IMG/VR virus record: IMGVR_UViG_3300023184_004198
Span: 148,615 to 212,614 of that record
Strand: one strand, 5' to 3'
DNA length: 64,000 nucleotides
The stretch's first letter is position 1. Every line of letters begins with the position of its first letter. The notes beneath the pieces were generated by a model that was given only the letters and a program-made list of their open reading frames with translations, had not been told where the DNA came from and ran no database searches. This document shows, one piece after another, positions 9,271 through 64,000 of this stretch. The translations under genes were made by a program, and so were the position numbers.

Positions 9271-9819
9271 ATGGAACTGAGAGATCACATTAACCTAGTA
9301 GAGGCCAGTACTAGACCGGCCAAGTTGGAAACCACTCCCTTGCCTTATGGTCCCAAAGACTTGGCACCGGTGATGAGTGCTGACACAATTAATTATCATT
9401 TTGAACACTTGGCCAAGGGCTATGCAAAACGTTATAATGCTGGAGAAGGCAATGCAGATTTCAATCGTGCTGGCAGTTTTTTACACAATAAGTTTTTCCC
9501 TCAGCTTCGCGCTCCCAAAGGTGCCAACAGACCCCGTGGTGCTGTACTTGCCTTGATTGAAGAGCATTTCAAAACCTACGAAGACTTCAAAGAGGCTGTT
9601 AAAGAAAAGGCCATGAAGATACAGGGTTCAGGTTGGGTGTATTTGAGCACTGGTGGTGAAATCAAAACCATTGCCAACCATGCTGTGCGCACAGATATCT
9701 GTGTGCTCATTGACTGGTGGGAACACGCCTGGGCATTGGATTATCAAAGCGACAAAGAACGCTATCTAGATAACATCTGGAAAATAATAGATTGGGACGT
9801 CTGTAACGAACGTCTGTAA
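9271..9819 (+). CDS. sod: Fe/Mn superoxide dismutase with an extra N-terminal leader
   Basis: PLPY...LAP.MS..T..YH, FN..G..LH, QGSGW.YL, DWWEHA; all four metal-ligand positions present. Confidence 0.9.
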   Translation: MELRDHINLVEASTRPAKLETTPLPYGPKDLAPVMSADTINYHFEHLAKGYAKRYNAGEGNADFNRAGSFLHNKFFPQLRAPKGANRPRGAVLALIEEHFKTYEDFKEAVKEKAMKIQGSGWVYLSTGGEIKTIANHAVRTDICVLIDWWEHAWALDYQSDKERYLDNIWKIIDWDVCNERL

Positions 9820-9828
9820 GGAGTCGGC

Positions 9829-10092
9829 ATGTGGCAACTACTGTGGGTACTACTGCCCGTTGTGGCACATGCGGACATGAATGATTGTGTGAGAGAACCC
9901 AACCAGGATAAAAAGAATTATTGTATGGCTACTTACAGCGGGAGTGCCGCTTTTTGCGATCGAATACGAGGCTACGAATATCGAACACAATGCATGCGAA
10001 TGGTCATTGCCAAGCAACGAGAAGTCGCATATCAAACACCCAAACCACCCACAAAGGAAAAAAAGAATGAACCTGCAACCAGCGGCCATTAG
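9829..10092 (+). CDS. Small secreted Cys-containing protein
   Basis: Signal peptide ending AHA; four Cys; AAGGAG RBS. Confidence 0.7.
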
Positions 10093-10387
10093 CAAACTAA
10101 AAGAACTTGTTGCTGAAGAAGGCAACCCTGAACTAAAACTACGAGTATTTGTACAAGGTGGAGGATGTTCAGGATTCAGTTATGGTTTTACATTTGATGA
10201 AGCTCGAAACGAAGATGATTTTGATTTCTCTTACGACACTGTGCAAGTTGTTGTAGATGCCATGAGCATGCAGTATCTACAAGGATCAGAGATTGATTAC
10301 AAAGAAGATATGATGGGCGCCAGCTTTGTGATCAACAATCCGCAAGCAGTCAGCACTTGCGGATGTGGATCAAGTTTTAGCATTTAA
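10067..10387 (+). CDS. erpA: Iron-sulfur cluster insertion protein, ErpA/IscA (HesB) family
   Basis: [17 protein letters not shown]...[13 protein letters not shown]. Confidence 0.9.
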
Positions 10388-25906: not shown

Positions 25907-26193
25907 GATACTTACTTTTAACCTATTACAAAAAACCCGACGGCAAGATTGACGAAGTCATGGCCGTGGCCAAAAACTTGAAAAAACGCGACATTGCAAC
26001 TTGCAACGTCATACTTGACTTTAAAAAATTAGAAGTGATCAAAGCCAGTATGTCGGGCACAGATGTACCAAAAGATTTTGACCGCATTGCAGGGTATTAC
26101 CATCAACACTATGCTGCCACCATAGAGCGATTGTTCAACGAGAATGGCTACGAAGTTGAAGTCAACAAACCCCAACAAGATGCGGCTGGATGA
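25903..26193 (+). CDS. Hypothetical protein
   Basis: ATGA coupling, MRYLLLTYY. Confidence 0.7.
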   Translation: MRYLLLTYYKKPDGKIDEVMAVAKNLKKRDIATCNVILDFKKLEVIKASMSGTDVPKDFDRIAGYYHQHYAATIERLFNENGYEVEVNKPQQDAAG

Positions 26194-34686: not shown

Positions 34687-35145
34687 ATGTGGATTTTACA
34701 CTTCTTACCGGACACACTCATACTTTGGATCTGCAACACGGTGTTGTTGGCAGGCATCTTGCTGACTGTGACAGCATTTTTTATCAAACGCATACCTGTC
34801 ATAAACCAATACCGGATACCCGCACAAGTTCTGGGCATCGCACTGCTGGTGATAGGCGTATACTGGCGCGGTGGCTATGCTATCGAAATGGAATGGCGAG
34901 AACGTGTGGCCGAAGTAGAAGCCAAGGTAGCGGCTGCTGAAGCACAGAGCCGAGAAGCCAACACAAAAATTGTAACCAAAGTTGTTACAAAAACACAGGT
35001 TATACGAACTCGTGGCGAAACTATCACCAAATACATTGACCGGGAAATTGTACAGTATGATACAAAGTTTGCCCCAGGTGGCCAGTGTGAAATACCACAA
35101 GAATTTATCAAAGCACACAACAGTGCAGCAGAGGCACCCAAATGA
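34687..35145 (+). CDS. Rz-like inner-membrane spanin
   Basis: TM segments, coiled coil, IVTKVV...TKYIDRE...C.IP..F...HN.AA. Confidence 0.65.
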   Translation: MWILHFLPDTLILWICNTVLLAGILLTVTAFFIKRIPVINQYRIPAQVLGIALLVIGVYWRGGYAIEMEWRERVAEVEAKVAAAEAQSREANTKIVTKVVTKTQVIRTRGETITKYIDREIVQYDTKFAPGGQCEIPQEFIKAHNSAAEAPK

Positions 35146-35678
35146 AAATTAACGACATTATTACAGAAGCCAAATCGGCACATCCACGACAGGCTGCAAA
35201 AGCCATAGCCATGAGAAATGCGGGCATAAAACCCAAGCACATGGGCGAGAGTGCAGAGTTGGCTGAAGAGTTTGATCTCATTGAATCAATCATTGAACGC
35301 CTGGCCGAACACAACGGTGTGGATTCTGAAGTGATCTGGGAAGATTTAGAAACACTGTCAGAAGATGAACTGTATGTGTTTGCTGTGACATCAGAGCCCA
35401 TCATGGAAAGTGAAGCCTGGCAAAAAGCCAACAACCGTGACAAAACAGATGGCATGAGTCGCAAAGCAGTGAAAACTTATCGCAGAGAACATCCAGGCAG
35501 TAAACTACAAACAGCAGTTACTACCAAGCCTAGTAAACTCAAGCGTGGTAGCAAGGCCAGCAAGCGTAGATCAAGTTATTGCAGTCGCAGTCGTGGACAG
35601 ATGAAGATGCACAGCATTTCGTGTTCCAAGACTCCAGACAAAGCAATATGCAAAGCACGTCGTCGTTGGAACTGCTGA
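35142..35678 (+). CDS. Leader-bearing putative internal head protein with basic Cys C-terminal domain
   Basis: MKINDIITE leader, acidic middle, RRSSYCSRS...KARRRWNC end. Confidence 0.7.
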   Translation: MKINDIITEAKSAHPRQAAKAIAMRNAGIKPKHMGESAELAEEFDLIESIIERLAEHNGVDSEVIWEDLETLSEDELYVFAVTSEPIMESEAWQKANNRDKTDGMSRKAVKTYRREHPGSKLQTAVTTKPSKLKRGSKASKRRSSYCSRSRGQMKMHSISCSKTPDKAICKARRRWNC

Positions 35679-39968: not shown

Positions 39969-39989
39969 TAAACATACAGGACCTTTCTT
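39954..39989 (+). terminator. Hairpin/terminator overlapping the dnaJ promoter and RBS
   Basis: AGGGTCCTGTAT-N8-ATACAGGACCTT then TCTT. Confidence 0.6.
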
Positions 39990-40775: not shown

Positions 40776-40795
40776 ATATTTTGGCACAGCCCAGG

Positions 40796-40824
40796 TTGCA
40801 CCAAATATGAAAATAGCATATAAT
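40796..40824 (+). promoter_or_regulatory. Sigma70-type promoter for clpA
   Basis: TTGCAC-N17-TATAAT. Confidence 0.65.
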
Positions 40825-40851
40825 AACCCATAGGACAACTCAAGGACCCAC

Positions 40852-47125: not shown

Positions 47126-47142
47126 CGGTAAATATAGTTCGT

Positions 47143-50100
47143 ATGAACATCAACGAACTAGACTCCTATAATCTTGCAGACGCAGTAAAATTTCACCGCC
47201 GTCTCAATCCCAGAATCTGGGGGCGAGACGAGCACTTGCTGCCTGAAGTGCGTGAAAAATTACTGGCCATTGCTGCGGATTTTCAAGAATTCCTGGGCGT
47301 GGATGATCTCAACGTTCAAGACATCACTATATCAGGCTCAAATGCAGCCTATTCATATACAAAAAATTCAGACATTGACCTGCATCTTGTGGTTGAGATG
47401 CCTGATGATCCTGTGTATCAGGAACTGTTCAACGCTAAAAAATATCAATACAACGACGAGCACAATATAAAGATTGGTGGTGCGGATGTAGAGTTATATG
47501 TACAGCCTAGTGATCAAGCACATCACAGCCAAGGCATTTATTCAATTCAAGACAACCAATGGTTGCAGGTACCTCAACGCAAACGTGCTCAAATAGATGA
47601 TGCGTGTGTGCGTGACAAGGTTGCAGACCTGGATGCCAGAATTCACGCTGCCGTCAAAAGCAAAAATATCGACGCTGTGACCACATTGTGGAACAAGATC
47701 AAAACCATGCGTCAAGCGGGACTCGAACAACATGGTGAGTTTGGCTGTGAAAACATTGCTTTCAAAATGTTGCGCAACAGCGGCTGCATTGGTGCGTTGA
47801 AAGATGCTAAAACAGCACTGCAAGATCGTGAACTCAGTCTGCATGAAGAGCCACGAAAGAGATTTCGTTATGGGTATGGTTCGACAATGGTTGAAGCATC
47901 TACTCCTGATGGAGTCAGTCCTACCACTCAAATGTTTTTGAATGAAGATGACGAGATTGAAACCAAAGTACGTGACTTCATCCAACATGTGACCACAGAA
48001 CTGGGTATTGACCCCATGCCAGAAATTCACTTGCACACTGATCCCGAATGGAGTGTACACAATCACAGTTTTGGTCGTTACGACCCTGACAGTCATACTT
48101 TGAATGTCAGCATGCCCAACCGCCACATCCTGGATGTGTTGCGTACAGTGGCACATGAACTGGTGCATTGCAGTCAAAACCAACAACATGGGCACTTGCC
48201 CGACGATGCAGGTGAAACTGGCAGTCGCTGGGAAAATGATGCCAATGCTCGTGCAGGTATCATCATGCGCGACTGGGCCAACGCACACCCAGAAGATTTT
48301 GAACAAGCACCCTTGGCAGAAAATGCTTCGGGCTATATTCCCAAGAACAAACGAGAAGCAGCCCGGCCACAGTATGCCATGGCACTGAGTGTGGATATCA
48401 AACCTGGGCAGGTGGGCAAAGAAGCCAACAAGTTGGCATTGAAAACTGGACGCAATGGTGAGCCAGGCTTGCTACAACCTGATGCACAAAACTTGTTGCG
48501 TGAGTTTGCAGAATTCGCAGAAGAACAAGAAAACTTGTTTGAAATAACCATGAGCCCCTCAAGTCTGCGCAAATTGAGTGCGCAAACTGGTGCCTTGGCC
48601 GGCATGGAATTTGAAATGTGTGTGCCCAACGTCGAAGGCAACGACGACGGTGATCAAGAACCTGACTATGACTATGATGAACGCTGCCGTAGCATTGAAG
48701 ATGCTGTGCAATTTTTCTATGATGGTGATTGGAACGGTCGTAGAGACGTAGAACGCATGCGTGAAAGAATGCAGAGTGATTTCAGTGATTGGCTGATGGA
48801 CAAGGTCTATCAAGACTGGGAACGCCATGGCGAGGAATATCTGGAAGAATGGGTGCCCAACAACGTGGACGAATCTGAGTGGAATCCTGAAGGCCTGGAA
48901 GGTGAGGCTCGTCAAGAAGCACTAGAAGAATACATCGCTGCTATGCATGCCGATGCCGGCAGCAGTGGTGATGCGTTTGATGAGTACAGAGAAGAAAATC
49001 AAGAGTCATATGACGAAAGTGACTGGTTGGATGACGAAGACCTAGACCGCATGAGTAGTATTGAAAATGCCTACTCAATGAACTGGCCGCACTGGACCAA
49101 CCCCGGCCGTGGCGAAACCAGCATTGAAGATATTGCTGACAGTTTTAGAGACGCAGTGGGCCGCCCAATACTAGCCAGCACCAGTTATCACAGCAGCCGA
49201 GTTGAACGACCCAGCACCAAAAACTTGGAATACATTGTAGAACCTGACAGCAGTATTGATGTTGATGACAACGACGATCGAGGCCTGGAGTTTGTAAGCC
49301 CGCCCTTGCCTATAGAAGAACTGCTGAGTGATTTGAACAAGGTCAAAGCCTGGGCTGATCGTACTGGTTGTTATACCAACGATTCAACCGGCCTGCATAT
49401 CAACGTGTCAGTACCTGGCTGGTCCGGCGACCTCAGTCAATTGGACTATGTAAAACTGGCCCTGTTGCTGGGCGATGAGCATGTGTTGGAATCTTTTGGA
49501 CGTGCTGGCAATACCTATTGCAAGTCAGCCATGGGCAAGATACAAAAAGCAGTGAAACAAAATCCTGACAAGGCAGAAGAACTGTTGGAACGCATGCGAC
49601 AGGGCATGGATCAACTGGCCAGCAAGGCCATACACTCAGGCGTCACAGACAAATACACATCAATCAACCCCAAAAATGGCTACATTGAATTCCGTTCACC
49701 CGGGGGCGATTGGTTGAATGATAACTTCAAAGAAATCGACAACACCCTGCGTAGATTCACAGTGGCCCTGAGTGCAGCCGTGGATCCTAAAGCGTATCGC
49801 CAAGAATATCTAAAGAAACTGTACAAATTGTTGGATGTTCACAGTGAAAAAGATCCCTTATCATACTTTGCAAAATTTGCCGCAGGCGAGTTGCCCAAGG
49901 CAGCACTGAAAAGTTTTGTGCGTCAAGCACAGTTAGAACGTGGTGTCAAGCGTGGCAAAGAAACAGGCCCAATGTGGTGGCGGGTGTACAAAGAAGGCAA
50001 AAATGCTGCCAACGGTGCCGTAATCGAAGTTGTGGCTTCTAGCCGAGAAGAAGCATTAGACAAAGCCGCCGAAGAATGGGGTGTGTTTAGCAACGAATAC

Positions 50101-52059
50101 CGACGTGCCATGTATGCCGAACCTGTACGTCCTTATGACGGAGTTGATACCAGCAGAGAGTATGAATTTTACGACCGACGGTCTGGTGCAGTGGTAGCCA
50201 CATTCCGTGCCAGTGATGATGATGCAGCCATAGCAAAACTGGATCAGTTCCGCGCAGCCCAAGTGCGAACACAGGGAATAACAGTGCCTCAAGCCAATGA
50301 GATATACGGTGTTCGTTCATCAGGAGTGGTCACTGCGCCGCCCAGAGATAGACCATCCACTGCTCCTATTCCAGGAAGCACCTTGGATCTACAACGTCAA
50401 CGACTGGCACAGGCACAATCGGGCGGCAACTGGGGTATTCTAATCACATCAAATGGTCGATTTGTTCGCATGTCTGGCACAGGTGATCCAACTGATAGAG
50501 CCCTGCGCAGATTTCCAAGTCGTGAGGCTGCTGAAGAATTTCTAGCACAAACTCGTGCAGAAAATCCCAACATGAGAACTGACATTGAGATTCGTGAGAT
50601 TCCTGCAGATTATCAATCACCCGGCCAACCTGCAGCAGCAATTCCCACCATTGACATTGATGTTGAACCTGCACCAGCACCACAGCCAGCGGGCATGGGA
50701 CAATGGAACGGACAATGGCGGGTCTTGGTTGGCGGTCAAGAAGTATACCGTTTTGGTGGTGTGGGCAACAGTCAAGCAGACGCCAATAGAATAGCAGCCG
50801 CTTGGTTGCGTGACAACGGACAAGGTGTATCTGGCGAAGGCTTTGAAGTATATCCGGTGATGAACGAAAGTTTGACTGAATCCAATCAACTGCAATTAAA
50901 AGATTTTGTGGTTACAATAAGTCCACATGCCCTGAGCCAAGCATATAACAAGGGTGTGGATGTTGACATTGTAGATGACATTTTGCGCAACATCAGTACA
51001 GTCAAAGATCGTATCATGAGCCTAGAACCTGGCAGAGCCCTGATCCTTCACAACGGACAAGGTACTGGCTTAGGCGTTCGTCGACAACAAGGCAACCGAT
51101 TGACCTTGGCCACAGTGTTTCCCACCAGTCCAGGATTTACTAAAGGCAAACATCCAACTTTTCGAGTTGAAGCAAACACTGTAGATGAAGGTGTAACGTC
51201 TGCCATGGATGCTGACCAAGTATTACACTATGTAAAAAAAACACATGGCGCCGACAAATTCAACATTGAATACAGCATAACTGATCATCCCCAGTGGGAA
51301 TTAAAAAATATTCCGTTGTCACAGTTGCACTTGGATCCTGATGGTGAACAACAGGATCCTTACAATAGAACCAACTGGGTTGACTACGATGTTGTGCGTG
51401 ATTTGATACCTAAGATCAAAAGCGTTCTGAAAAATACACCTATTGTGGTAGACGCCGACGGTTGGATCATTGACGGAAATCATCGTGCCATGGCAGCACT
51501 AGATGCAGGATTAACAAGTGTGCCTGCACTTGTACCTGTTATAGTTAAAGAAGATCTGACAGAAGCCAAAACAACCCGAGAAGATTTTGAGGGTATGACC
51601 ATTGAGATGATTAAAAATGGTCATGTATTAGTGATCAATGCGATTGATGATTGGGGCAATAATATCCTGGGTTCTGTTGCTTTCAATATTGGTGATGACA
51701 ATGATTTAGATCCACAAGACTTAAAGGTCGATGAAAGATATCAAGGTCAAGGTATTGCTCGAGTCATGTATGATTATGCAAAAAGCAAGGGCTACGAGAT
51801 TCATCGTAGTTATGACCAAACTGATGCCGGTCGAGGCTTTTGGGACAAGCATCGCGGAGCGGATGTGCGTGTATGGGAAAACTTTGCGGATGGCAAGAAT
51901 CCCGGACGCAAGGGTTTGAGCAAGCGTGTAGGAGTCAACACCAAAGCGTCAGTGAGTGATTTACGTAAGACTGCTAAAAATTCATCAGGTGAGAAACAAC
52001 GCATGGCCCACTGGCTGGCCAACATGAAAGCCGGCAGAGCCAAGGCCAAGAAGAAATGA
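47143..52059 (+). CDS. 1638-aa polyvalent protein: Pol-beta NTase, zincin peptidase, amidoligase, ParB-like, GNAT and basic modules
   Basis: GSNA.Y...SDIDLH; AHELVH; GMEFE...LEFVSPPL...TGLHIN...IEFRS; IDGNHRA; YQGQGIARVMY. Confidence 0.85.
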   Translation: MNINELDSYNLADAVKFHRRLNPRIWGRDEHLLPEVREKLLAIAADFQEFLGVDDLNVQDITISGSNAAYSYTKNSDIDLHLVVEMPDDPVYQELFNAKKYQYNDEHNIKIGGADVELYVQPSDQAHHSQGIYSIQDNQWLQVPQRKRAQIDDACVRDKVADLDARIHAAVKSKNIDAVTTLWNKIKTMRQAGLEQHGEFGCENIAFKMLRNSGCIGALKDAKTALQDRELSLHEEPRKRFRYGYGSTMVEASTPDGVSPTTQMFLNEDDEIETKVRDFIQHVTTELGIDPMPEIHLHTDPEWSVHNHSFGRYDPDSHTLNVSMPNRHILDVLRTVAHELVHCSQNQQHGHLPDDAGETGSRWENDANARAGIIMRDWANAHPEDFEQAPLAENASGYIPKNKREAARPQYAMALSVDIKPGQVGKEANKLALKTGRNGEPGLLQPDAQNLLREFAEFAEEQENLFEITMSPSSLRKLSAQTGALAGMEFEMCVPNVEGNDDGDQEPDYDYDERCRSIEDAVQFFYDGDWNGRRDVERMRERMQSDFSDWLMDKVYQDWERHGEEYLEEWVPNNVDESEWNPEGLEGEARQEALEEYIAAMHADAGSSGDAFDEYREENQESYDESDWLDDEDLDRMSSIENAYSMNWPHWTNPGRGETSIEDIADSFRDAVGRPILASTSYHSSRVERPSTKNLEYIVEPDSSIDVDDNDDRGLEFVSPPLPIEELLSDLNKVKAWADRTGCYTNDSTGLHINVSVPGWSGDLSQLDYVKLALLLGDEHVLESFGRAGNTYCKSAMGKIQKAVKQNPDKAEELLERMRQGMDQLASKAIHSGVTDKYTSINPKNGYIEFRSPGGDWLNDNFKEIDNTLRRFTVALSAAVDPKAYRQEYLKKLYKLLDVHSEKDPLSYFAKFAAGELPKAALKSFVRQAQLERGVKRGKETGPMWWRVYKEGKNAANGAVIEVVASSREEALDKAAEEWGVFSNEYRRAMYAEPVRPYDGVDTSREYEFYDRRSGAVVATFRASDDDAAIAKLDQFRAAQVRTQGITVPQANEIYGVRSSGVVTAPPRDRPSTAPIPGSTLDLQRQRLAQAQSGGNWGILITSNGRFVRMSGTGDPTDRALRRFPSREAAEEFLAQTRAENPNMRTDIEIREIPADYQSPGQPAAAIPTIDIDVEPAPAPQPAGMGQWNGQWRVLVGGQEVYRFGGVGNSQADANRIAAAWLRDNGQGVSGEGFEVYPVMNESLTESNQLQLKDFVVTISPHALSQAYNKGVDVDIVDDILRNISTVKDRIMSLEPGRALILHNGQGTGLGVRRQQGNRLTLATVFPTSPGFTKGKHPTFRVEANTVDEGVTSAMDADQVLHYVKKTHGADKFNIEYSITDHPQWELKNIPLSQLHLDPDGEQQDPYNRTNWVDYDVVRDLIPKIKSVLKNTPIVVDADGWIIDGNHRAMAALDAGLTSVPALVPVIVKEDLTEAKTTREDFEGMTIEMIKNGHVLVINAIDDWGNNILGSVAFNIGDDNDLDPQDLKVDERYQGQGIARVMYDYAKSKGYEIHRSYDQTDAGRGFWDKHRGADVRVWENFADGKNPGRKGLSKRVGVNTKASVSDLRKTAKNSSGEKQRMAHWLANMKAGRAKAKKK

Positions 52060-52592
52060 AGATGTTAAAAAAATTTCCGCAGTTGGCTACATCTGCTATG
52101 TTGTTTGCTCCCTCGTTGGATGAGCATTACAAAATATTTGCTACGTTTTTCAATGACAAAGATACAGTATTGGATGTAGGGTATGGTGATGGCAGTTTTG
52201 CTAGATACATAGGTGCAGTTGGAGTAGACGAAAATACTGATCTCAGCACAATCAATTTGCAACAATTCGATACATTATTATTTTCTGAATCAATAGGGTA
52301 TTTGAGTTATTATGAATTTTTAACATACTTCAATCAAGTTCAACCTAAAAAAATAGTGATCAAAGATTTTTTGTGTACCCAACCCGTTGCTGTTCCATAT
52401 TTTAATTACAACTTTGAATTTTTTCATTCAACAATTTTGCCTTTTTTATTGAAACAAGGATATCACGCAAATGTTTCGATGTTTGATCCACACGTTGGCC
52501 GTTGGATCTCGTTGTTAGAACAATGCGGACTAGAATTTGTACCTGCACTGGACATTAAAAATATAATTGCAGTGTTTGAAAGATCATTATGA
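52056..52592 (+). CDS. SAM-dependent methyltransferase (AT-rich)
   Basis: VLDVGYGDG; FSESIGY; IKDF. Confidence 0.7.
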   Translation: MKMLKKFPQLATSAMLFAPSLDEHYKIFATFFNDKDTVLDVGYGDGSFARYIGAVGVDENTDLSTINLQQFDTLLFSESIGYLSYYEFLTYFNQVQPKKIVIKDFLCTQPVAVPYFNYNFEFFHSTILPFLLKQGYHANVSMFDPHVGRWISLLEQCGLEFVPALDIKNIIAVFERSL

Positions 52593-53017
52593 GAAACTAC
52601 ATCAACCTAATCGAAGCAGTACAACGGGGTTGTCCCTTGGCCACACATGACATTGATGAGAACTTGAAGAATCGTCAAACAGCCATAGATGAATATCACT
52701 ATGGTCCTGCCAATCCTGCCCGTGCTGAAGACTACTGGAAAAAGAGTGCCAAGATTTTTGGTGTCAGTGAGGCCACTGCAAAGACCATGCAATGTGGCAA
52801 CTGTGCGGCATTTGATGTCAGTGACAGCATGAGAGAATGTATTGCTGCGGGCATACGTGGTGATGCCACCGGAGTTGATGCCAACGCCAGCATCAACTTG
52901 GCTGACCTGGGCTACTGTAACTTTTTACACTTCAAGTGTGCAGGCACACGTAGTTGCAAGGCCTGGATCACTGGTGGGCCCATCACCGAAAAAGACAAAA
53001 ATAAAAGCGCGGACTGA
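52589..53017 (+). CDS. Cys-rich (HiPIP-like spacing) protein with leader
   Basis: MRNYINLIE leader; CGNC.AF...GYC.....C...RSC.AW. Confidence 0.65.
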   Translation: MRNYINLIEAVQRGCPLATHDIDENLKNRQTAIDEYHYGPANPARAEDYWKKSAKIFGVSEATAKTMQCGNCAAFDVSDSMRECIAAGIRGDATGVDANASINLADLGYCNFLHFKCAGTRSCKAWITGGPITEKDKNKSAD

Positions 53018-53020
53018 ACT

Positions 53021-53596
53021 GTGCAACAACATGAATTCACTGCTGAAGCCAGCCCGGACACATTGTCAGGTAGTTTTACTCCAGATCTTGTGAGCAGCAA
53101 GACTTGGTTGTGTAATCAACTCAAAAAACAACTGGGCGATACCAGTGCTGGCGACATCTATATCTTGGGCTCATGGTACGGCAACCTGGGCATATTTTTA
53201 CAGCAGGCCAACATTGACTTTGATCGCTTGATCATGGTAGAAACTCGTCCACGCTTGTTGGCCACAGCACGCCGACTGCTAGAACCACTATATCAAGCGG
53301 GGCAACTAAAGTTGGTGCTGGGTCGTGCTGAACAAATTGAGTATCCACGCAAAAACTTCACAGTGATCAACACCAGCGCCAACGACATGAGTCGTAGTTG
53401 GATAACTAGAGTACCCCTGGGCACTCTTACTGTGATACAATCACGTGACAATGTCAAAGACGTCAAGGTCATTACAGACACAGCAGCACAGTTTTATGCC
53501 AAGTTTCCCCTGGAAAACACTGTGTATTGGGGGCAACGCAGACTGCGTGATCCAGAAACACGCTACACACGCTTCATGAAGATTGGCTATAAATAA
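53021..53596 (+). CDS. Rossmann/methyltransferase-like protein with leader
   Basis: SK.WL, ILGSWYG, INTS, RFM.IG; GTG start. Confidence 0.65.
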   Translation: MQQHEFTAEASPDTLSGSFTPDLVSSKTWLCNQLKKQLGDTSAGDIYILGSWYGNLGIFLQQANIDFDRLIMVETRPRLLATARRLLEPLYQAGQLKLVLGRAEQIEYPRKNFTVINTSANDMSRSWITRVPLGTLTVIQSRDNVKDVKVITDTAAQFYAKFPLENTVYWGQRRLRDPETRYTRFMKIGYK

Positions 53597-53602
53597 ACAA
53601 TC

Positions 53603-53956
53603 ATGAAGTACAGAGAAATTCTTGAAGCCTGCTGGACTGGTTATCGCCAAGCAGGCATGAAAAACAAAGGTGGTCGCCAGGTGCCCAATTGTGTACCAGT
53701 GCATGAAGCTGAACTGGAAGAAAATCTCCGTGACTGGTTCAAAGAAAAATGGGTGCGTTTTGGGCCTGATGGCAAAATTCGCGGCGATTGTGCCAGAGGA
53801 TCAGAATCGGAGGGCAAGCCCAAGTGTTTGCCCCAGGCCAAAGCACATGCCTTGGGCAAAAAAGGTCGTGCAAGTGCAGCGGCTCGCAAGCGCAGAGAAG
53901 ATCCCAACCCCAACCGTACAGGAAAGGCCATCAACGTGGCCACTAAAAAGAAATGA
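53603..53956 (+). CDS. Leader-bearing protein made of two basic Cys micro-domains
   Basis: MKYREILE|ACW.GY...VPNCVP; LEE|NLRDWFKEKWV...C...KPKCLP. Confidence 0.75.
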   Translation: MKYREILEACWTGYRQAGMKNKGGRQVPNCVPVHEAELEENLRDWFKEKWVRFGPDGKIRGDCARGSESEGKPKCLPQAKAHALGKKGRASAAARKRREDPNPNRTGKAINVATKKK

Positions 53957-55464
53957 TCATAGACGAACTATTTGAAGCCCCACAACAGTGTCCCGAATGC
54001 GGTGGCATCAGTTTCTCAGACTTGATCTTGGCTGAAAAGAAAGACGCCTGCTACTACAAAGTCAAAGCGTCAGCCAAAGTATGGCCGTCGGCGTATGCGT
54101 CAGGACGCTTGGTACAGTGCCGCAAAAAAGGTGCTGCCAACTATGGCAACAAGTCGGAAGGTGTGGCGGAAGTATACAATGCAATTACTGGTGCATTACT
54201 AGCATACGATGAGCATGAAAAAAACAAGGGTGTGGCGGAAGGCTCCGGCAACGTTGGCAATGCTATTAAATCTTTATACCAAAAGATCTATGCTGCTGGC
54301 GACGATGAAATAGAATATTTCTACAACGACAGTCCCATTTTTGCACAATACTGGGACGAATACGAAGGTGATCTAAACTCAATCATTGCCGAAGTTGATC
54401 CCGGCGAATTACAAGTAATGCTAGACGAATTAGAATCCTATGCTCAACAGGCAGGGTTGGCGGAAGAACAAGAGTTAGACGAAAAGTGGAGCCAAAAATA
54501 CAAGAGTTCAATCAACTGTGCCAACCCCAAGGGCTTCTCACAAAAGGCACACTGTGCTGGTCGTAAGAAAAATGAATCAATAGCAGAAGCACCACTACCT
54601 GGACAACGTCGTGACCCATTGGATCTTCAACCGTTGGAAGGTGGGTCAGCCGGTGGAGGATCTCTTGGCAGCGGCATTGGCCCACGTCCTGTTGAGCCTT
54701 TGCCTAAGTGGACTCCAACACGAATACCCGGAGTTGATGTTCACACTGGTCCACCTCCTGTGGTAACAAAACCCCCAAACATCAATTCAAAAATAGATCC
54801 AGCTGCAGAAGTACCTGCTTATGTAAGACAAGGTAAACCAGATCCTGTTACTACACCTGTTGGCAAACCCAAAATTCAAATCAAGCCTGGCGAGACCATG
54901 GATCAGGCCATACAACGCACCCGGGCCGAACAAGAATTCAGCAATTTTCTCAAGGGCCAAGGCGGTCAGTCATTTGGCACTGCAGGTGGCGGGCGTGGAG
55001 GTCAAGGTGGGCCAACAGCCTCTCAAGCAACATCTGGCTCTGACCAAGTACCAACAATAAGACTTCCCGGTGGGAAATTAAGCGTGGATCCCGATCGTTT
55101 GTCTCCAAGTGGCAATTATAAAACACCGGCAACATCATCAGATCATGTCGGGGACAAAGAAGCCTATAATGCAGCCTTGAAGATACGAAAAGATCAGTGG
55201 AATCAACTGAAGACTGGCAAAGAAAAAGAAGGCGAGAAACGTCGAAGTGCATGGAAAAATCCCGAAACTGACGTAGACCTAGAAGAAACACGTAAAAAAC
55301 GTGAGCAGCCTGAAGCCAACTACGACGACGAATACGATGCCATGGTTGCTAGAGTTAAAAAATTAGCCGGATTGGGTCCCATGAAAACTGTGTATGATCC
55401 CAACAAGCGACAATATCGCAACATGCCCACAGCAGTACAACCCAAAGTACAGCCTAAAAAATGA
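53953..55464 (+). CDS. Leader-bearing modular polyprotein
   Basis: MIIDELFE; modules bounded by LAE, GVAE, GVAE, GLAE, LDE, IAE, LEE. Confidence 0.8.
   Translation: MIIDELFEAPQQCPECGGISFSDLILAEKKDACYYKVKASAKVWPSAYASGRLVQCRKKGAANYGNKSEGVAEVYNAITGALLAYDEHEKNKGVAEGSGNVGNAIKSLYQKIYAAGDDEIEYFYNDSPIFAQYWDEYEGDLNSIIAEVDPGELQVMLDELESYAQQAGLAEEQELDEKWSQKYKSSINCANPKGFSQKAHCAGRKKNESIAEAPLPGQRRDPLDLQPLEGGSAGGGSLGSGIGPRPVEPLPKWTPTRIPGVDVHTGPPPVVTKPPNINSKIDPAAEVPAYVRQGKPDPVTTPVGKPKIQIKPGETMDQAIQRTRAEQEFSNFLKGQGGQSFGTAGGGRGGQGGPTASQATSGSDQVPTIRLPGGKLSVDPDRLSPSGNYKTPATSSDHVGDKEAYNAALKIRKDQWNQLKTGKEKEGEKRRSAWKNPETDVDLEETRKKREQPEANYDDEYDAMVARVKKLAGLGPMKTVYDPNKRQYRNMPTAVQPKVQPKK
54160..54240 (+). repeat. Direct repeat GGTGTGGCGGAA(G) encoding GVAE
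   Basis: Copies at 54160-54171 and 54229-54240; variant GGGTTGGCGGAA at 54454-54465. Confidence 0.85.
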
Positions 55465-56285
55465 GAGCCCAAGAATTCATCAATGAGGCAACTGATATAA
55501 ATGCACCGCCACCTAATGTCAGGTGGAGCATGGATACAGACGTAGAAGATGGTAAACCAGTGCATGTAGCCACCTGGAAAGATCCCAAAGGCAACAATGT
55601 AAGAAGTTTTTTCAAACCAAATGATGAAGGTACATCTGCCAGGGTATTGTTTGATCGGCCAGACAAAGAAGGCAATCCTTCATACAGTAGAACTGGTCAA
55701 GGTAACGCACCACAAGTTTTTACTGGAGCATTAAGCAATACTAAAACTTTTTTAGATAATAATCCCAATATCCAATCAGTAAATTTTGACAGTCAGGCGC
55801 CTACCCGTAGTAGTCTCTATGCCAGGATGATCGACAAACACGCACCACAAGCAGGCTTGGTTGGCTCAGCAAATGTGAAAACACCTGCTTATGGCGAAGT
55901 AGAGTTTGCACTAAATCGCGCCACAAACGATCAACAACATCAGCCCATTTACAAGCAAGTACGTGATAGTATACCAGCGTTGCAGAAGGATTTTAGAAAT
56001 CCTCCTGGTACACGTTTAGGAGCACCTGTTCCGCAAACTGATTCCCCAACTGGTCCAAAAACTGGTCCGGGTGTTAGCCTAGAGAGACCGCCAGGCTATA
56101 AACAAAACACTGGTAGTTCTACCGCTGCTGCAACAAAATTACCACCGTCCGGAAAGGCTATTCCTCCCTCTGTGACGGGCCAACCGTTTACTCCTAGTTT
56201 TGCTGGTTCCCACAGCAACTCTCCTGGTGCCCAGGCCTTCCAGGACTATCAAGATTGGTTCAAACGGAAGATGCCCCGCATTTAA
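55461..56285 (+). CDS. Leader-bearing hypothetical protein
   Basis: MRAQEFINE; R.SLY.RM motif; Pro-rich tail. Confidence 0.75.
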   Translation: MRAQEFINEATDINAPPPNVRWSMDTDVEDGKPVHVATWKDPKGNNVRSFFKPNDEGTSARVLFDRPDKEGNPSYSRTGQGNAPQVFTGALSNTKTFLDNNPNIQSVNFDSQAPTRSSLYARMIDKHAPQAGLVGSANVKTPAYGEVEFALNRATNDQQHQPIYKQVRDSIPALQKDFRNPPGTRLGAPVPQTDSPTGPKTGPGVSLERPPGYKQNTGSSTAAATKLPPSGKAIPPSVTGQPFTPSFAGSHSNSPGAQAFQDYQDWFKRKMPRI

Positions 56286-56290
56286 TTAAT

Positions 56291-62712: not shown

Positions 62713-62740
62713 TATTTATAGGCTGCTATTTTGCTAAATA
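62713..62740. promoter_or_regulatory. Divergent pair of late-type promoters
   Basis: TATAAATA on - (62713-62720) and TAAATA on + (62735-62740), each 4 nt from an ATG. Confidence 0.65.
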
Positions 62741-62744
62741 CAAT

Positions 62745-63050
62745 ATGCAAACACATTTTGTCCGAGTTGAATGCGATGTCACAGCCAAGGTACATGGTCA
62801 GCCACTGCGTTACCGAGCTTATGTAAACAATGAACTGTTTGTTGAACGCACCTGGATCTGGACTGACTGCTATTTGGAAGAGTCATTTCAAATCCAAGCC
62901 GGACCGGGAGTGTATCCCATACGATTTGAAACTGTGGACGAAGCCAATGGTCGCATCAAAGTGCGCAATCACAGAATTGTAACAGGCCCAGGCAGAATAA
63001 TAGAGTATCAAGGCGAACCAAGTTTGGAGATATCAGATGCAAGTACGTGA
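62745..63050 (+). CDS. Hypothetical protein
   Basis: YR.YVN.ELF.ERTWIW; 101 aa. Confidence 0.7.
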
Positions 63051-63255
63051 AATTGTAGAATCAGCGTCAGCAGGCGCCAGCAGTGCAGGCGGTATTGCAC
63101 CTGTGTCCATGCCCATGGGTACGTTATCAAGATCTGGCGGTTCCCTGCTGACAGGTAAATATACAACAGGTTCGGATCCAACACCGAATACACCTAAAGA
63201 ATACAAGAGGAATAATGATGCTCGCGGACAGTTTAAAAACTCTATTAGCAACTGA
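63037..63255 (+). CDS. Small leader-bearing protein
   Basis: MQVREIVE|SASAGASSAG; GGAG RBS. Confidence 0.6.
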   Translation: MQVREIVESASAGASSAGGIAPVSMPMGTLSRSGGSLLTGKYTTGSDPTPNTPKEYKRNNDARGQFKNSISN

Positions 63256-63661
63256 ATATGCTTTCAGTATCAAGGCCCAGTTGTTTCACTGGAATGTGGA
63301 AGGCCCTGATTTTGCACAACTGCACGAGTTTTTTGGCAACTTGTACGAAGAAGTCTACAACGGCAGCATAGATAAAACTGCCGAATACATTCGTGCCATG
63401 GGCGACTATGCACCAGGCAGTTTTGAACGCTTTGGTGAACTCAGTATCATACAGGGTCAAACAAAGATTCCACGTGCCCGACTCATGATTGAAGAATTGT
63501 TGGCCAACAATGGTCAATTGCTAGAACTACTCAACGAGAATTTTGCCATTGCTGAACAAGAAAATCAACAAGGCATTGCTAACTTTATTGCAGAACGCAT
63601 TGATGCACATCAGAAACATGCATGGATGCTGAGAAGTTTCTTGAAAGACCAACGAGCATGA
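63215..63661 (+). CDS. dps: Dps DNA-protection ferritin-like protein
   Basis: FHWNVEG..F..LH.FF...YEE....D..AE.IR; H.K.AWML. Confidence 0.92.
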   Translation: MMLADSLKTLLATEYAFSIKAQLFHWNVEGPDFAQLHEFFGNLYEEVYNGSIDKTAEYIRAMGDYAPGSFERFGELSIIQGQTKIPRARLMIEELLANNGQLLELLNENFAIAEQENQQGIANFIAERIDAHQKHAWMLRSFLKDQRA

Positions 63662-64000
63662 GCAACGACATCCGTGATATAATACGACGCCTGGACATGG
63701 TGGAGGGACGACTGAGCCCTGCTCAGCAAAAGGTACCACAACTGCCTGCGCTGTTCAAACCACACGGTATTCGAGCACTAGGCAGCAAAACAGATCCTGC
63801 TCATCCAATGGACGGATACATGGTTGGTGACTCAGTAGAGCCAAAGCGTACTGCTCTTGAAGAAGCCATGGCTGAGATTGAAGAAGACATGCTCAGCAAG
63901 GTCAAGAAAGACTTGACACACTATCTGGACCGACTAGAAAAGAAAGTGCGTGTTGATCGCGCATTAAAAGACAAGGCCTTGGATGCTGTGGAAAAACGTC
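63658..64000 (+). CDS. Partial leader-bearing hypothetical protein, runs off the window
   Basis: MSNDIRDIIRRLDMVE|GRL...; open to the end. Confidence 0.6.
   Translation, partial: MSNDIRDIIRRLDMVEGRLSPAQQKVPQLPALFKPHGIRALGSKTDPAHPMDGYMVGDSVEPKRTALEEAMAEIEEDMLSKVKKDLTHYLDRLEKKVRVDRALKDKALDAVEKR

What the first reader, a model, noticed from the sequence alone, without database searches (positions are those of the whole stretch)
9271..64000. Candidate novel system: capsid-targeting leader plus Glu-specific processing shared by about 11 unrelated cargo proteins
Unrelated proteins begin with a similar short leader ending hydrophobic-X-E followed usually by a small residue: SOD MELRDHINLVE|AS (9271), MKINDIITE|AK (35142), MNINE|LD (47143), MRNYINLIE|AV (52589), MQQHEFTAE|AS (53021), MKYREILE|AC (53603), MIIDELFE|AP (53953), MRAQEFINE|AT (55461), MRAREFIRE|LD (56291), MQVREIVE|SA (63037), MSNDIRDIIRRLDMVE|GR (63658). 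This resembles the T4 internal-protein capsid-targeting sequence (MKTYQEFIAE), removed by prohead protease gp21 after (I/L)-X-E. The same xxE motif recurs at domain junctions within these proteins. Inference: the phage loads a broad payload (SOD, NTase, peptidase, amidoligase, GNAT, methyltransferase-like, Fe-S-like proteins) into its head, matures it proteolytically and may inject it. This would be a much larger enzymatic cargo than T4's IPs and Alt, and a possible protein-delivery tag.
Basis: partly seen in the sequence, partly recalled or inferred. Interest (0 to 1): 0.92.

Follow-up and report, generated by a model that had tools for sequence, protein, structure and literature searches.

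The report
Capsid-targeting leaders on jumbo-phage cargo proteins
An uncultured giant phage related to Pseudomonas phage PA5oct puts a short T4-like "load me into the head and cut me after Glu" leader on at least nine unrelated proteins, including a superoxide dismutase and a 1638-residue multi-enzyme protein. This extends a known T4 trick to a much larger, freely exchangeable cargo set.

Summary
All 11 N-termini are present as described. The loose rule "hydrophobic-X-E" is not enriched at N-termini. A tighter leader, [D/E/N][F/I/L][I/L/V/F/T]x0-1E ending by residue 12, is enriched: 8 of 89 ORFs against about 1 expected.

Relatives give the stronger evidence.
- **Orthologues:** they keep the leader and an invariant Glu while the rest diverges.
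- **Variable locus:** the leader MRAQEF(I/V)xE sits on different proteins in different relatives, with DNA similarity ending right after it.
- **Spread:** this leader starts more than 120 IMG/VR ORFs in at least 19 unrelated families.
- **Head proteins:** the same kind of leader heads scaffold-like and gp67-like proteins beside a Peptidase_S77 (T4 gp21) protease and a gp23-type capsid gene in related contigs.
- **T4 similarity:** the T4 leader is MKTYQEFIAE.
- **Module borders:** modules inside multi-module proteins are almost always preceded by h-x-E.
- **PA5oct virions:** mass spectrometry detected its SOD homologue and a protein starting MKINDIITE.

Best reading: T4-type capsid-targeting and cleavage leaders on an enlarged, cassette-like cargo. 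Packaging, cleavage and injection are inferred, and this contig's own protease gene was not retrieved. This is a new variant of a known kind.

The parts
9271..9819 (+). Fe/Mn superoxide dismutase homologue. It has an 11-residue leader MELRDHINLVE|AS (9271-9303) and a 7-8 residue linker ahead of the SOD fold.
   Evidence: Pfam Sod_Fe_C E 1e-21. The fold starts at about residue 20, which aligns with residue 3-5 of bacterial SODs, and the metal ligands H43, H72, D148 and H152 are kept. The top 120 of 3359 homologues keep [IL][DN][LI][VIL]E|A[ST] while the leader's length and sequence vary. PA5oct homologue gp261 starts MNDSIKKYISIAE|AA and is flagged ESI-MS/MS.
9260..9265 (+). TAAATA element 5 nt upstream of the SOD start; putative T4-like late promoter core.
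   Evidence: 12 of 26 + strand TAAATA end 1-40 nt upstream of a gene start, against 1.06 expected (P about 1e-10). The genes include tail-fibre genes 14631 and 17395.
35142..35678 (+). Two-module basic protein: leader MKINDIITE|AK (35142-35168), an AKSAHP module, junction PIME|S (Glu codon 35406-35408), then DUF6321.
   Evidence: Pfam DUF6321. The leader is identical to that of PA5oct gp150, a virion protein next to the portal. In 118 of 119 homologues h-x-E precedes DUF6321. The AKSAHP module always follows h-x-E, whether that comes from the leader or from an internal junction.
47143..52059 (+). 1638-residue polyvalent protein. Order of parts: MNINE|LD; NTase-like (10-233); HExxH region (about 336-345); Amidoligase_2 (659-857); variable cassettes; ParB-like (about 1387-1476); GNAT-like (1489-1554); NFADGK basic tail (1580-1628).
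   Evidence: Pfam and PHROG hits. Orthologues share residues 1-940 and swap C-terminal cassettes at conserved Glu sites: 393 (48319-48321), 1242 and 1246 (50866-50880), 1579 (51877-51879). The NFADGK module exists elsewhere as a stand-alone protein, MRAREFVIE|NFADGK.
47129..47134 (+). TAAATA element 8 nt upstream of the polyvalent gene, at the start of a tightly coupled operon 47143-56932.
52589..53017 (+). 142-residue virus-only protein with leader MRNYINLIE|AV.
   Evidence: Orthologues start MRNLINLIE|AK. ESM Atlas: the fold is also found fused to portal, S78 prohead protease, ferritin+DUF5824 and DUF6321 proteins; this is a lead only.
53021..53596 (+). 191-residue protein with leader (GTG)MQQHEFTAE|AS; class I SAM methyltransferase-like fold (lead only).
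   Evidence: Orthologues start MRHHEITQE|AS or MRHYEITAE|AS. Atlas structural neighbours are SAM methyltransferases at TM 0.74-0.78, and alignments to the closest viral clusters start at about residue 11-13.
53603..53956 (+). 117-residue basic two-module protein with leader MKYREILE|AC and internal junction ELEE|N (Glu codon 53720-53722). A TAAATA element lies at 53590-53595.
   Evidence: phrog_727 and phrog_23735. Orthologues start MTY(R/K)EILE|AC. The modules recur in cyanomyovirus multi-module proteins, each after a Glu.
53953..55464 (+). 503-residue multi-module protein with leader MIIDELFE|AP and junctions ELDE|K (54481-54483) and SIAE|AP (54586-54588).
   Evidence: Orthologues are 383-617 residues long with MII(D/S)ELFE|. 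The module KWxxKYKxSINC exists as stand-alone MRAREFITE|KWTKKYKKSINC, aligned exactly after the Glu. The modules occur in 365 cyanophage records.
55461..56285 (+). 274-residue protein with leader MRAQEFINE|AT, sitting in a hypervariable cargo slot.
   Evidence: Relatives carry MRAQEFVxE on unrelated proteins of 130, 445, 186 and 201 residues at the same locus. DNA identity is high upstream and in the 27-nt leader, then random. P6-P3 and P1 are identical to the T4 CTS MKTYQEFIAE (PMC8442874).
56291..56932 (+). 213-residue protein with leader MRAREFIRE|LD and C-terminal module after QLDE|L (Glu codon 56783-56785).
   Evidence: The C-terminal TKDCSGHRAGY module is found in stand-alone or differently combined leader proteins.
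63037..63255 (+). 72-residue basic protein with leader MQVREIVE|SA. A TAAATA element lies at 62735-62740, upstream of the operon.
   Evidence: Orthologues start MRACEIVE|SA or MRAYEITE|SA. The same cargo follows MRAQEFIME| and MRAQEFIKE| in IMG/VR. phrog_17311 matches residues 1-25.
63658..64000 (+). Protein cut by the window end, with a longer leader MSNDIRDIIRRLDMVE|GR (weaker candidate).
   Evidence: Relatives have MSNDIR(S/D)IL(D/Q)RL(A/T)(T/A)VE|(G/S)R on proteins of 219-430 residues.

Best explanation
The short N-terminal peptides are T4-type capsid-targeting sequences (CTS).

**Proposed mechanism.** Each leader is an amphipathic leader of 5-16 residues. It would bind the assembling prohead core. 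A gp21-family (Peptidase_S77) prohead protease would then remove it by cutting after the invariant Glu of an (I/L/V/F/T)-x-E site.

**Lineage.** The phage belongs to a large uncultured lineage of T4-like-headed jumbo phages related to PA5oct. In that lineage one leader type is attached to many unrelated proteins.

**Cargo.** It includes:
- an Fe/Mn SOD;
- a polyvalent NTase / HExxH / amidoligase / ParB / GNAT protein;
- a SAM-methyltransferase-like protein;
- many small basic Cys-containing modules.

**Polyproteins.** Multi-module proteins are strings of such modules separated by the same h-x-E sites. The same protease would cut them into pieces inside the head.

**Cassette exchange.** New cargo is acquired by recombination at the leader-coding sequence and at the junctions.

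**Shown.** The leaders exist. They are enriched at N-termini. They and their Glu are conserved. They resemble the T4 CTS and head-module proteins of related phages. Cargo and module borders coincide with them.

**Inferred.** Binding to the core, cleavage, retention in the capsid and delivery into the host.
For: **1. Enrichment and specificity.**
- 8-9 of 89 ORFs carry the leader against about 1 expected.
- No gene with a recognisable housekeeping function carries it. These include clamp loader, PhoH, DnaJ, ClpA/B, IF-1, NAD synthase and radical SAM.
- 36 kb further upstream in the same phage hold only one more hit.
- The same expression is selective for gp21 substrates in T4.

**2. Similarity to T4.** The T4 CTS is MKTYQEFIAE (PMC8442874); the window has MRAQEFINE, MRAREFIRE and MQQHEFTAE. 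T4 Alt is cut at ITE-6 and LTE-619 (PMC5694885); compare MNINE|, DIITE|, DLTE| and SLTE|. Three of the four positions mutational work found important in IPIII (F7, I8, E10) are matched; the fourth (Y4) aligns with Ala in MRAQEFINE (PMC9026906).

**3. Head context.**
- PA5oct gp152 is Peptidase_S77 and gp154 is Gp23.
- PA5oct gp150, between the portal gene and gp151 in the head-gene cluster, starts MKINDIITE.
- In 160 related head-module loci the scaffold-like, gp67-like and capsid proteins start MAKKIDEILSE|S, MKAKDLLVE|, MIVTELFE|P and MSQELLE|S.
- One 15-kb contig holds portal, S77 protease, scaffold and capsid genes followed by at least 5 genes with MRAxEFIxE-type leaders.
- A 345-kb contig from the window's own metagenome has both a T4-like capsid gene and MRA-leader genes.

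**4. Selection acts on the peptide.**
- SOD homologues at 83-93% identity vary the leader's length and sequence but keep [IL][DN][LI][VIL]E|A[ST].
- 35142 homologues keep MK[IV][NT][EDQ]I[IL]xE.
- Leader codons differ synonymously between relatives.

**5. Portability.**
- The same leader sits on different cargo at one locus, with a sharp DNA breakpoint after 27 nt.

**6. Junctions.**
- Stand-alone leader-tagged modules align to internal modules exactly after a Glu.
- 118 of 119 DUF6321 modules follow h-x-E whatever lies upstream.
- The polyvalent protein's cassette borders lie at conserved Glu sites.

**7. Virion data from a relative.** PA5oct gp261 (SOD homologue with a leader) and gp150 are flagged ESI-MS/MS. 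In relatives the leader block is followed by homologues of PA5oct gp310 and the DNA polymerase. That places it in the ClpA-to-DNA-polymerase interval, which in PA5oct is a run of mostly mass-spectrometry-detected proteins.

**8. Timing.** A TAAATA element lies 4-40 nt upstream of the SOD gene, of the polyvalent operon, of 53603 and of 62745. The same element precedes the tail-fibre genes.
Against: - There is no proteomic or biochemical evidence for this phage.
- Its own protease, scaffold and capsid genes were not retrieved. The contig is 212 kb, and about 36 kb upstream of the window showed no head genes.
- The PA5oct virion list also contains RNR, thymidylate synthase, FtsH and ligase, so detection there is weak proof of packaging.
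- The residue after the Glu is not restricted to small residues in the IMG/VR set (Q, S, N, G, A, T, D, K ...).
- The motif definition was tuned after looking at the data.
- One window junction (TMVE|AST, residue 251) is not conserved.
- PA5oct's own proteins in the syntenic block lack such leaders.
- The TAAATA element is inferred to be a late promoter only by analogy with T4's TATAAATA; the full octamer is not enriched.
Confidence: 0.78

Rival explanations
1. The leaders do target proteins to the prohead core, but most of these proteins are expendable core or scaffold components or precursors of small DNA-associated internal peptides (like T4 gp22, gp67 and gp68). They would be cut up and partly expelled, not delivered as an enzymatic payload.
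For: The same kind of leader heads scaffold-like and gp67-like proteins in related head modules. Many cargo modules are short, basic and Cys-containing, and are strung together with many Glu junctions. T4 core proteins are cut into fragments (PMC5694885).
Against: Several tagged proteins have intact enzyme folds or motifs: the SOD keeps all four metal ligands, and there are Amidoligase_2, GNAT-like and methyltransferase-like domains. The cargo slot is hypervariable, like the T-even IP loci, which encode injected anti-defence proteins (PMC3012670). For the small modules this rival and the best explanation overlap.
Confidence: 0.12
2. The shared N-terminus is a recognition tag for another machine, for example the phage's own Clp chaperone-protease system (ClpA/B in the window, two ClpP genes upstream), or some other localisation or turnover signal. 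It would not be a capsid-targeting signal.
For: The phage encodes ClpA/B-like and ClpP proteins. From my own knowledge, not checked here: N-terminal Met-basic-hydrophobic motifs can act as ClpX recognition signals.
Against: The motif is shared with T4 (MKTYQEFIAE). It sits on capsid, scaffold-like and gp67-like proteins adjacent to an S77 protease. It also occurs in cyanomyoviruses. A turnover tag does not explain the invariant Glu at internal module borders.
Confidence: 0.04
3. The polyvalent and multi-module proteins are processed by their own embedded zincin-like metallopeptidase, as proposed for polyvalent proteins in general. The prohead protease plays no part and the Glu junctions are incidental.
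For: An HExxH motif lies at about residues 336-345 of the 1638-residue protein. Iyer et al. propose autoprocessing by the MPTase domain (PMC5512222).
Against: No profile hit supports a peptidase domain. The small multi-module proteins (35142, 53603, 53953 and the cyanophage proteins) have the same Glu junctions but no HExxH domain. The two mechanisms are not mutually exclusive.
Confidence: 0.04
4. Chance or compositional similarity of amphipathic N-terminal helices, or common descent of paralogous genes.
For: The loose hydrophobic-X-E rule is as common inside proteins as at N-termini.
Against: The tight motif is about 8-fold enriched. It is conserved in thousands of homologues. It sits on proteins with no detectable similarity to each other, with DNA breakpoints exactly at its end.
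Confidence: 0.02

Closest known systems
T4 internal proteins IPI/IPII/IPIII and their capsid targeting sequence (CTS, MKTYQEFIAE), cut by prohead protease gp21 (Peptidase_S77)
   Same: An extreme N-terminal leader of about 10 residues ending (I/L)-x-E. P6-P3 and P1 (QEFI..E) are identical in 55461. The leader is conserved while the cargo is polymorphic and the locus hypervariable. Most of the predicted mature proteins are basic (PMC8442874, PMC9026906, PMC3012670).
   Different: The host phage is an uncultured PA5oct-related jumbo phage. There are at least nine tagged genes in 64 kb, against three IPs plus Alt in T4. Several leader variants exist (MRAxEFIxE, MKINDIITE, MIIDELFE, xINL(I/V)E). 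The cargo includes recognisable enzymes and multi-module polyproteins. No experimental proof.
T4 Alt (ADP-ribosyltransferase packaged in the head; cut at ITE-6 and LTE-619)
   Same: An enzyme carried in the head, with a very short N-terminal propeptide and a second internal or C-terminal h-T-E cut. Compare MNINE|LD, SLTE| and DLTE| in the 1638-residue protein (PMC5694885).
   Different: The window protein is a five-or-more-domain polyvalent protein with no ART domain detected, and it has many candidate cut sites.
T4 gp67/gp68/gp22 prohead core proteins and the internal peptides derived from them
   Same: Small proteins encoded next to the portal and protease genes, which the protease cuts into fragments (PMC5694885). 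PA5oct gp150 and its relatives occupy the gp67 position and share the leader with window protein 35142.
   Different: The window's modules are encoded away from the head module and are shuffled as cassettes. Their fate (retained or expelled) is unknown.
Polyvalent proteins of phages and conjugative elements (Iyer, Burroughs, Anand, de Souza, Aravind 2017)
   Same: One polypeptide combines NTase-like, HExxH, ParB-like, GNAT-like and other domains, sits in a late or virion gene context, and is predicted to be delivered with the DNA (PMC5512222).
   Different: That paper proposes autoprocessing by the embedded MPTase. Here the module borders carry prohead-protease-type Glu sites and an N-terminal Alt-like leader. 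'Amidoligase' does not occur in that paper's main text.
phiKZ / 201phi2-1 / SPN3US ejection and inner-body proteins cut by S80 proteases
   Same: Giant phages that load many proteins into the head and cut them after Glu in a short motif (PMC5694885).
   Different: In those phages most propeptides are long (over 100 residues), though one of 20 residues is reported. The motifs reported have a small residue at P3 (AXE, SXE). The protease family is S80. Here the leaders are 5-16 residues with a hydrophobic P3, and the associated protease family is S77.
Phage P1 Dar system (DarA/DarB/Hdf/DdrA/DdrB head-packaged anti-restriction proteins)
   Same: Large accessory proteins incorporated into the head and injected; a ParB-like domain is present in DdrB (PMC5512222).
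   Different: From my own knowledge: P1 incorporation depends on an ordered protein hierarchy, not on a shared short N-terminal CTS. No homology was detected here.

Membership tests
T4-type capsid-targeting sequence / internal-protein system | Short (about 5-20 residue) propeptide at the extreme N-terminus of otherwise unrelated proteins | tested here: met
   Homologous folds start after the leader (SOD at residue about 20; methyltransferase-like at about residue 11).
T4-type capsid-targeting sequence / internal-protein system | Leader ends in the gp21-type site (I/L or other hydrophobic)-x-Glu, with the Glu indispensable | tested here: met
   The Glu is invariant in the top 120 SOD homologues and the top 120 homologues of 35142, and in the orthologues L092-L096. 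P3 is I, L, V, F or T.
T4-type capsid-targeting sequence / internal-protein system | Sequence resemblance to the experimentally defined CTS (MKTYQEFIAE; residues 4, 7 for targeting, 8, 10 for processing) | tested here: met
   MRAQEFINE, MRAREFIRE and MQQHEFTAE share QEF(I)xE or EFxxE. Other leaders keep only the acidic-hydrophobic-hydrophobic-x-E pattern (PMC8442874, PMC9026906).
T4-type capsid-targeting sequence / internal-protein system | The genome encodes a Peptidase_S77 (gp21) prohead protease with a gp23-type capsid protein | tested here: inconclusive
   Present in PA5oct and in related IMG/VR contigs that also carry the leaders. The window contig's own head module was not retrieved.
T4-type capsid-targeting sequence / internal-protein system | Conserved leader with polymorphic cargo at hyperplastic loci | tested here: met
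   one locus, at least four cargo types; at least 19 families behind one leader.
T4-type capsid-targeting sequence / internal-protein system | Proteins are physically in the prohead or virion and lose the leader | not testable with these tools
   Indirect only: PA5oct gp261 and gp150 are flagged ESI-MS/MS. Peptide-level data are not held.
T4-type capsid-targeting sequence / internal-protein system | Expression together with late (structural) genes | tested here: inconclusive
   The TAAATA element is shared with tail-fibre genes and strongly positioned upstream of starts. There are no transcript data, and the full T4 octamer is not enriched.
Polyvalent proteins (Iyer et al. 2017) | Two to fifteen unrelated effector-type domains in one phage polypeptide | tested here: met
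   phrog_36119 NTase-like (1-233), Amidoligase_2 (659-857), ParB-like (about 1387-1476), GNAT (1489-1554, below the Pfam cut-off).
Polyvalent proteins (Iyer et al. 2017) | Embedded zincin-like MPTase domain for processing | tested here: inconclusive
   Only an HExxH motif (VAHELVH, about residues 336-342) is seen. No Pfam, PHROG or PDB profile hit.
Fe/Mn superoxide dismutase | Sod_Fe_N and Sod_Fe_C domains with the His, His, Asp, His metal ligands | tested here: met
   C-domain E 1e-21. The N-domain scores 24.9 bits, just under the 27-bit cut-off, and is shortened. Ligands H43, H72, D148 and H152 align with solved SODs. Activity was not tested.
phiKZ-like S80 protease / inner-body system | Mostly long propeptides and small-residue-x-Glu sites (AXE, SXE), with an S80 protease | tested here: not met
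   The leaders are 5-16 residues with hydrophobic P3. The associated protease in relatives is S77 (PMC5694885).

The most novel reading that the evidence does not exclude
A very abundant, uncultured lineage of T4-like-headed jumbo phages, and in part the cyanomyoviruses, may use a universal 8-11-residue leader and Glu separators as a plug-and-play loading system.

- Any protein or small module that acquires the leader, by recombination at the leader-coding 27 nt or at a junction, would be packed into the head, trimmed by the prohead protease and delivered with the DNA.
- That would yield a fast-evolving injected arsenal far larger than T4's. It would include redox enzymes (SOD), nucleotide- and protein-modifying enzymes, and polyproteins that are cut into many small basic DNA-associated peptides.
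- It would also mean that polyvalent proteins are matured by the capsid protease rather than by their own peptidase.
Probability: 0.45. Interest if true: 0.75.

Novelty: new variant of a known kind. Interest (0 to 1): 0.62.

Why it matters
If confirmed, a short sequence signature would let one read the head-packaged proteome of a large group of uncultured giant phages, and of cyanophages, straight from sequence.

- **Candidate early effectors.** It would point to dozens of protein families that may be injected and act against host defences.
- **Polyvalent proteins.** It offers a concrete, testable mechanism for how they are matured: the prohead protease cuts at Glu junctions.
- **A packaged redox enzyme.** I know of no report of a phage carrying a superoxide dismutase in its particle, and the one literature search I ran found none.
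- **Protein-packaging tags.** It would provide new natural tags for phages other than T4.

It does not change the known principle, which was established in T4.

Tried and rejected
1. **Near-identical DNA in cultured phages.** None found. The closest cultured relative is PA5oct, at 56% protein identity for the clamp loader.

2. **The loose hydrophobic-X-E rule.** It is not enriched at N-termini, so it was dropped as evidence.

3. **The full T4 late promoter TATAAATA.** 3 hits against 1.25 expected, not significant. Only the TAAATA core is positioned upstream of starts.

4. **Paralogy among the leader proteins.** Rejected.

5. **This contig's own head module.** Not obtained.
   - Searches with the PA5oct capsid protein and with a more divergent capsid protein each returned 80 other contigs.
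- Walking about 36 kb upstream with the look-up of encoding contigs found only small mostly unnamed genes and a few metabolic genes (ClpP, radical SAM, amidase, UvdE).

6. **The PA5oct paper.** It has no discussion of cleavage or of SOD, and no supplementary peptide tables are held.

7. **PDB sequence searches for 53021, 52589 and the 1638-residue protein.** Nothing significant.

8. **The roughly 125-residue MRA-leader family against cultured phages.** No match.

9. **Literature strings MRAREFI, MRAHEFI and similar.** In no paper of the searchable library.

10. **32452 (MDAKQFVKKLVE|D) as a further leader.** Rejected, because the Glu is Gln in relative L094.

11. **LLATE in 63215.** This is part of the ferritin/Dps fold, not a leader.

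12. **TMVE|AST at residue 251 of the polyvalent protein.** Not conserved.

Full report
**What the window is.** It is the last 64 kb of IMG/VR contig 3300023184_004198, which is 212,614 bp long. A 99.99% identical ENA contig from another sample overlaps it. No cultured phage is close at the DNA level. The best protein relative is the Pseudomonas jumbo phage PA5oct, at 56% identity for the clamp loader. The two share synteny across clamp loader, PhoH, gp295, DnaJ, ClpA and gp299. PA5oct has a T4-type head: gp149 is the portal (as annotated in the record), gp152 is Pfam Peptidase_S77 (the gp21 family) and gp154 is Pfam Gp23 (PMC7318152).

**The observation.** Beyond the leader the proteins are unrelated, apart from some shared small modules.

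A tighter pattern, [DEN][FIL][ILVFT].?E ending by residue 12, is enriched:
- It matches 8 of 89 ORFs against 1.07 expected (P about 2e-5). The pattern was defined after seeing the data.
- The count is 9 with the 56291 start.
- Six hits are consecutive genes, 52589-56932.

In T4 (bases 50-150 kb) the same pattern recovers ipII, ipIII, gp24, alt, alt.-1 and gp68. It gives one false real gene (lysozyme e) and two spurious ORFs. It misses ipI, gp67, gp21, gp22 and gp23. So in a T4-type phage it is selective for gp21 substrates but not sensitive.

None of the window's recognisable housekeeping genes carries the pattern. These are NAD synthase, IF-1, an IscA-like protein, radical SAM, clamp loader, PhoH, DnaJ, ClpA/B and ferritin/Dps. 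About 36 kb of small mostly unnamed genes and a few metabolic genes (ClpP, radical SAM, amidase, UvdE) upstream in the same phage adds one hit.

**Resemblance to T4.**
- The T4 CTS is MKTYQEFIAE (PMC8442874). Window 55461 has MRAQEFINE, which is identical at P6-P3 and P1. 56291 has MRAREFIRE and 53021 has MQQHEFTAE.
- Three of the four positions found important in T4 IPIII (F7, I8, E10) are matched; the fourth (Y4) aligns with Ala in MRAQEFINE (PMC9026906).
- T4 Alt is cut at ITE-6 and LTE-619 (PMC5694885). The 1638-residue protein begins MNINE|LD and contains SLTE| and DLTE|.

**Head-module context in relatives.**
- PA5oct gp150, between the portal gene and gp151 in the head-gene cluster and detected in virions, starts MKINDIITE. 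This is the same nine residues as window 35142.
- 160 head-module loci were fetched with two capsid-protein queries. Their scaffold-like proteins start MAKKIDEILSE|S or MTKFADILAE|S. Their gp67-position proteins start MKAKDLLVE|, MIVTELFE|P or MNITE|LF. Their capsid proteins start MSQELLE|S.
- One 15-kb contig carries portal, S77 protease (53% identity to PA5oct), scaffold and capsid genes. At least five genes follow, starting MKIKDILAE, MRAIEFIIE, MRIAEFITE, MRAKEFINE and MRAHEFIIE.
- A 345-kb contig from the same metagenome as the window has both a T4-like capsid gene and MRA-leader genes.

**Conservation.**
- The SOD has 3359 database homologues, and the top 120 are 83-93% identical. Their leaders differ in length and sequence (MREHIDLIE, MELRDHINLVE, METASAIMDFLHIVE and others). 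All but about five end in [ILVM]-x-E|A[ST], most of them [IL][DN][LI][VIL]E.
- The SOD fold begins at about residue 20, aligned with residue 3-5 of bacterial enzymes. The leader plus a short linker is therefore an extension that cellular SODs lack. The four metal ligands are kept.
- Homologues of 35142 (3200 hits) keep MK[IV][NT][EDQ]I[IL]xE.
- Five related operon loci keep every leader of the 52589-56285 cluster, of 63037 and of 63658.
- Leader codons differ synonymously between relatives, so selection acts on the peptide.

**Portability.**
- At the 55461 locus the relatives carry MRAQEFVxE on unrelated proteins of 130, 445, 186 and 201 residues.
- Where two relatives carry different cargo (for example L092 and L093), DNA identity is 80-90% upstream and in the 27-nt leader, then drops to random right after it.
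My estimate of chance hits is about three.
- Almost all matches sit at ORF starts, and the cargo falls into at least 19 unrelated families.
- No paper in the searchable library contains these strings.

**Junctions.**
- Stand-alone leader-tagged modules align to internal modules of the window's proteins exactly after a Glu. Examples are PIME|SEAW (35142) and ELDE|KWSQ (53953). VWE|NFADGK (polyvalent tail) and QLDE|LNFLG (56291) were placed by eye.
- In 118 of 119 homologues the DUF6321 module follows h-x-E whatever lies upstream.
- The AKSAHP module always follows h-x-E, supplied either by the N-terminal leader or by an internal junction such as PRMME| or PKMFE|.
- Orthologues of the polyvalent protein share residues 1-940 and exchange C-terminal cassettes at conserved Glu sites 393, 1242/1246 and 1579.
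- The same modules are concatenated in T4-like cyanophage proteins (S-PRM1, 704 residues; P-SSM4 gp156), each after a Glu. S-PRM1's next gene starts MKTYNQFVLE|A.

**Expression and virion hints.**
- TAAATA occurs 26 times on the + strand. Twelve occurrences end 1-40 nt before a gene start, against 1.06 expected (P about 1e-10).
- These genes include tail-fibre genes and the SOD, 47143, 53603 and 62745 transcription units.
- dnaJ and clpA/B instead have sigma-70-like promoters.
- PA5oct's SOD homologue gp261 (37% identity, MNDSIKKYISIAE|AA) and gp150 are flagged ESI-MS/MS. That list also holds obvious non-structural enzymes.
- In relatives the leader block is followed by homologues of PA5oct gp310 and the DNA polymerase. 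That places it in the ClpA-to-DNA-polymerase interval, which in PA5oct is a run of mostly mass-spectrometry-detected proteins.

**Interpretation.** The most economical reading is a T4-type CTS and cleavage system with an enlarged, cassette-like cargo (confidence about 0.78).
- Shown: existence, enrichment, conservation, portability, junction coincidence, and association with S77-type head modules in relatives.
- Inferred: core binding, cleavage, retention and injection.
- The main rival is that many of these proteins are expendable core components or precursors of internal peptides rather than delivered enzymes.
- A Clp tag, exclusive autoprocessing by the HExxH region, and chance are all unlikely.

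**Novelty.** The principle is known from T4, and it has been suggested to be general for T4-like phages (PMC9026906). What is new:
- the lineage;
- the leader variants;
- the number and kinds of tagged proteins (SOD, a polyvalent protein, a methyltransferase-like protein);
- the Glu-separated module architecture;
- the link to polyvalent proteins (PMC5512222).

**Limits.**
- There are no experimental data for this phage.
- Its own protease was not found.
- The motif and the junction definitions were partly made after seeing the data.

Noticed in passing
window 9260, 14607, 17368, 28581, 32415, 37864, 39244, 44788, 46155, 47129, 53590, 62735 (+ strand): A TAAATA hexamer sits 4-40 nt upstream of 12 gene starts, against 1.06 expected. 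It precedes tail-fibre genes and the leader operons. It looks like a shortened T4-type late promoter, often too close to the ATG to leave room for a Shine-Dalgarno sequence.
   Followed up: partly
window 39930-39989 and 40790-40851: Near-consensus sigma-70 promoters (TTGACC ... TATAAT and TTGCAC ... TATAAT) precede the phage dnaJ and clpA/B genes, in contrast to the TAAATA genes.
   Followed up: no
window 3672-4460, 8419-8637, 9944-10387, 26144-27118, 31447-32412, 63215-63661: Auxiliary genes: NAD synthase, a translation factor IF-1 homologue, an IscA/HesB-type Fe-S assembly protein right after the SOD, a radical SAM/SPASM enzyme, a TctC-like binding protein with a signal-peptide-like N-terminus, and a ferritin/Dps-like protein embedded between two leader genes.
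   Followed up: no
L305:12404-14700 (same phage, about 25 kb upstream of the window): A 395-residue protein starts MRDLINLIE|N and is followed by a LysM/SLT lytic transglycosylase starting MRLKEFTND. This second start is a CTS-like leader with Asp where the Glu should be. In T4, Asp at this position blocks cutting but not targeting (PMC9026906). The pair is flanked by two ClpP genes.
   Followed up: partly
L092:13460-14695, L093:6351-9266, L095:19352-20578 (just beyond the window end in relatives): Further large proteins (408 to 971 residues) start MIINDLFxNKKxxxAE|G. They are followed by a homologue of PA5oct virion protein gp310 and the DNA polymerase.
   Followed up: partly
L097-L216 (IMG/VR): The commonest cargo behind MRAxEFIxE is a cluster of 81 proteins of 73-134 residues (mostly about 125) in the sample, with subtypes such as ...LPPEQADPMRYTYVIPGLSAADPY... 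and ...GKISKRNQSATVGLNTF.... Two subtypes often lie in tandem. It has no Pfam hit and no match in cultured phages.
   Followed up: partly
L218:2267-5010 (Synechococcus virus S-PRM1), L217:921-3845 (Prochlorococcus phage P-SSM4): T4-like cyanophages carry the same small Cys-containing modules, concatenated with a Glu before each. They also have neighbouring genes with CTS-like starts: MKTYNQFVLE|A, MLSFKAYLAE|K, and MKKFSAFLKE|A on a cytidylyltransferase.
   Followed up: partly
window 52589-53017: The ESM Atlas places the fold of this virus-only 142-residue protein inside larger phage proteins annotated as portal, S78 prohead protease, ferritin+DUF5824 or DUF6321 proteins. This hints at a head-associated domain.
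   Followed up: no
window 10384-13161 (- strand): The 925-residue fibre-like protein's counterpart in the ENA contig carries precomputed Hom_end_hint and weak Gly_rich_2 hits, so an intein or Hint-like segment in a tail-fibre gene is possible.
   Followed up: no
window 47143-47880 and L007-L009: The N-terminal NTase-like domain of the polyvalent protein exists as a stand-alone protein of about 240 residues in Synechococcus myoviruses and Maribacter phages (35-39% identity). Its starts are similar: MNLQEF, MNLKTL, MKRLLSEL.
   Followed up: partly
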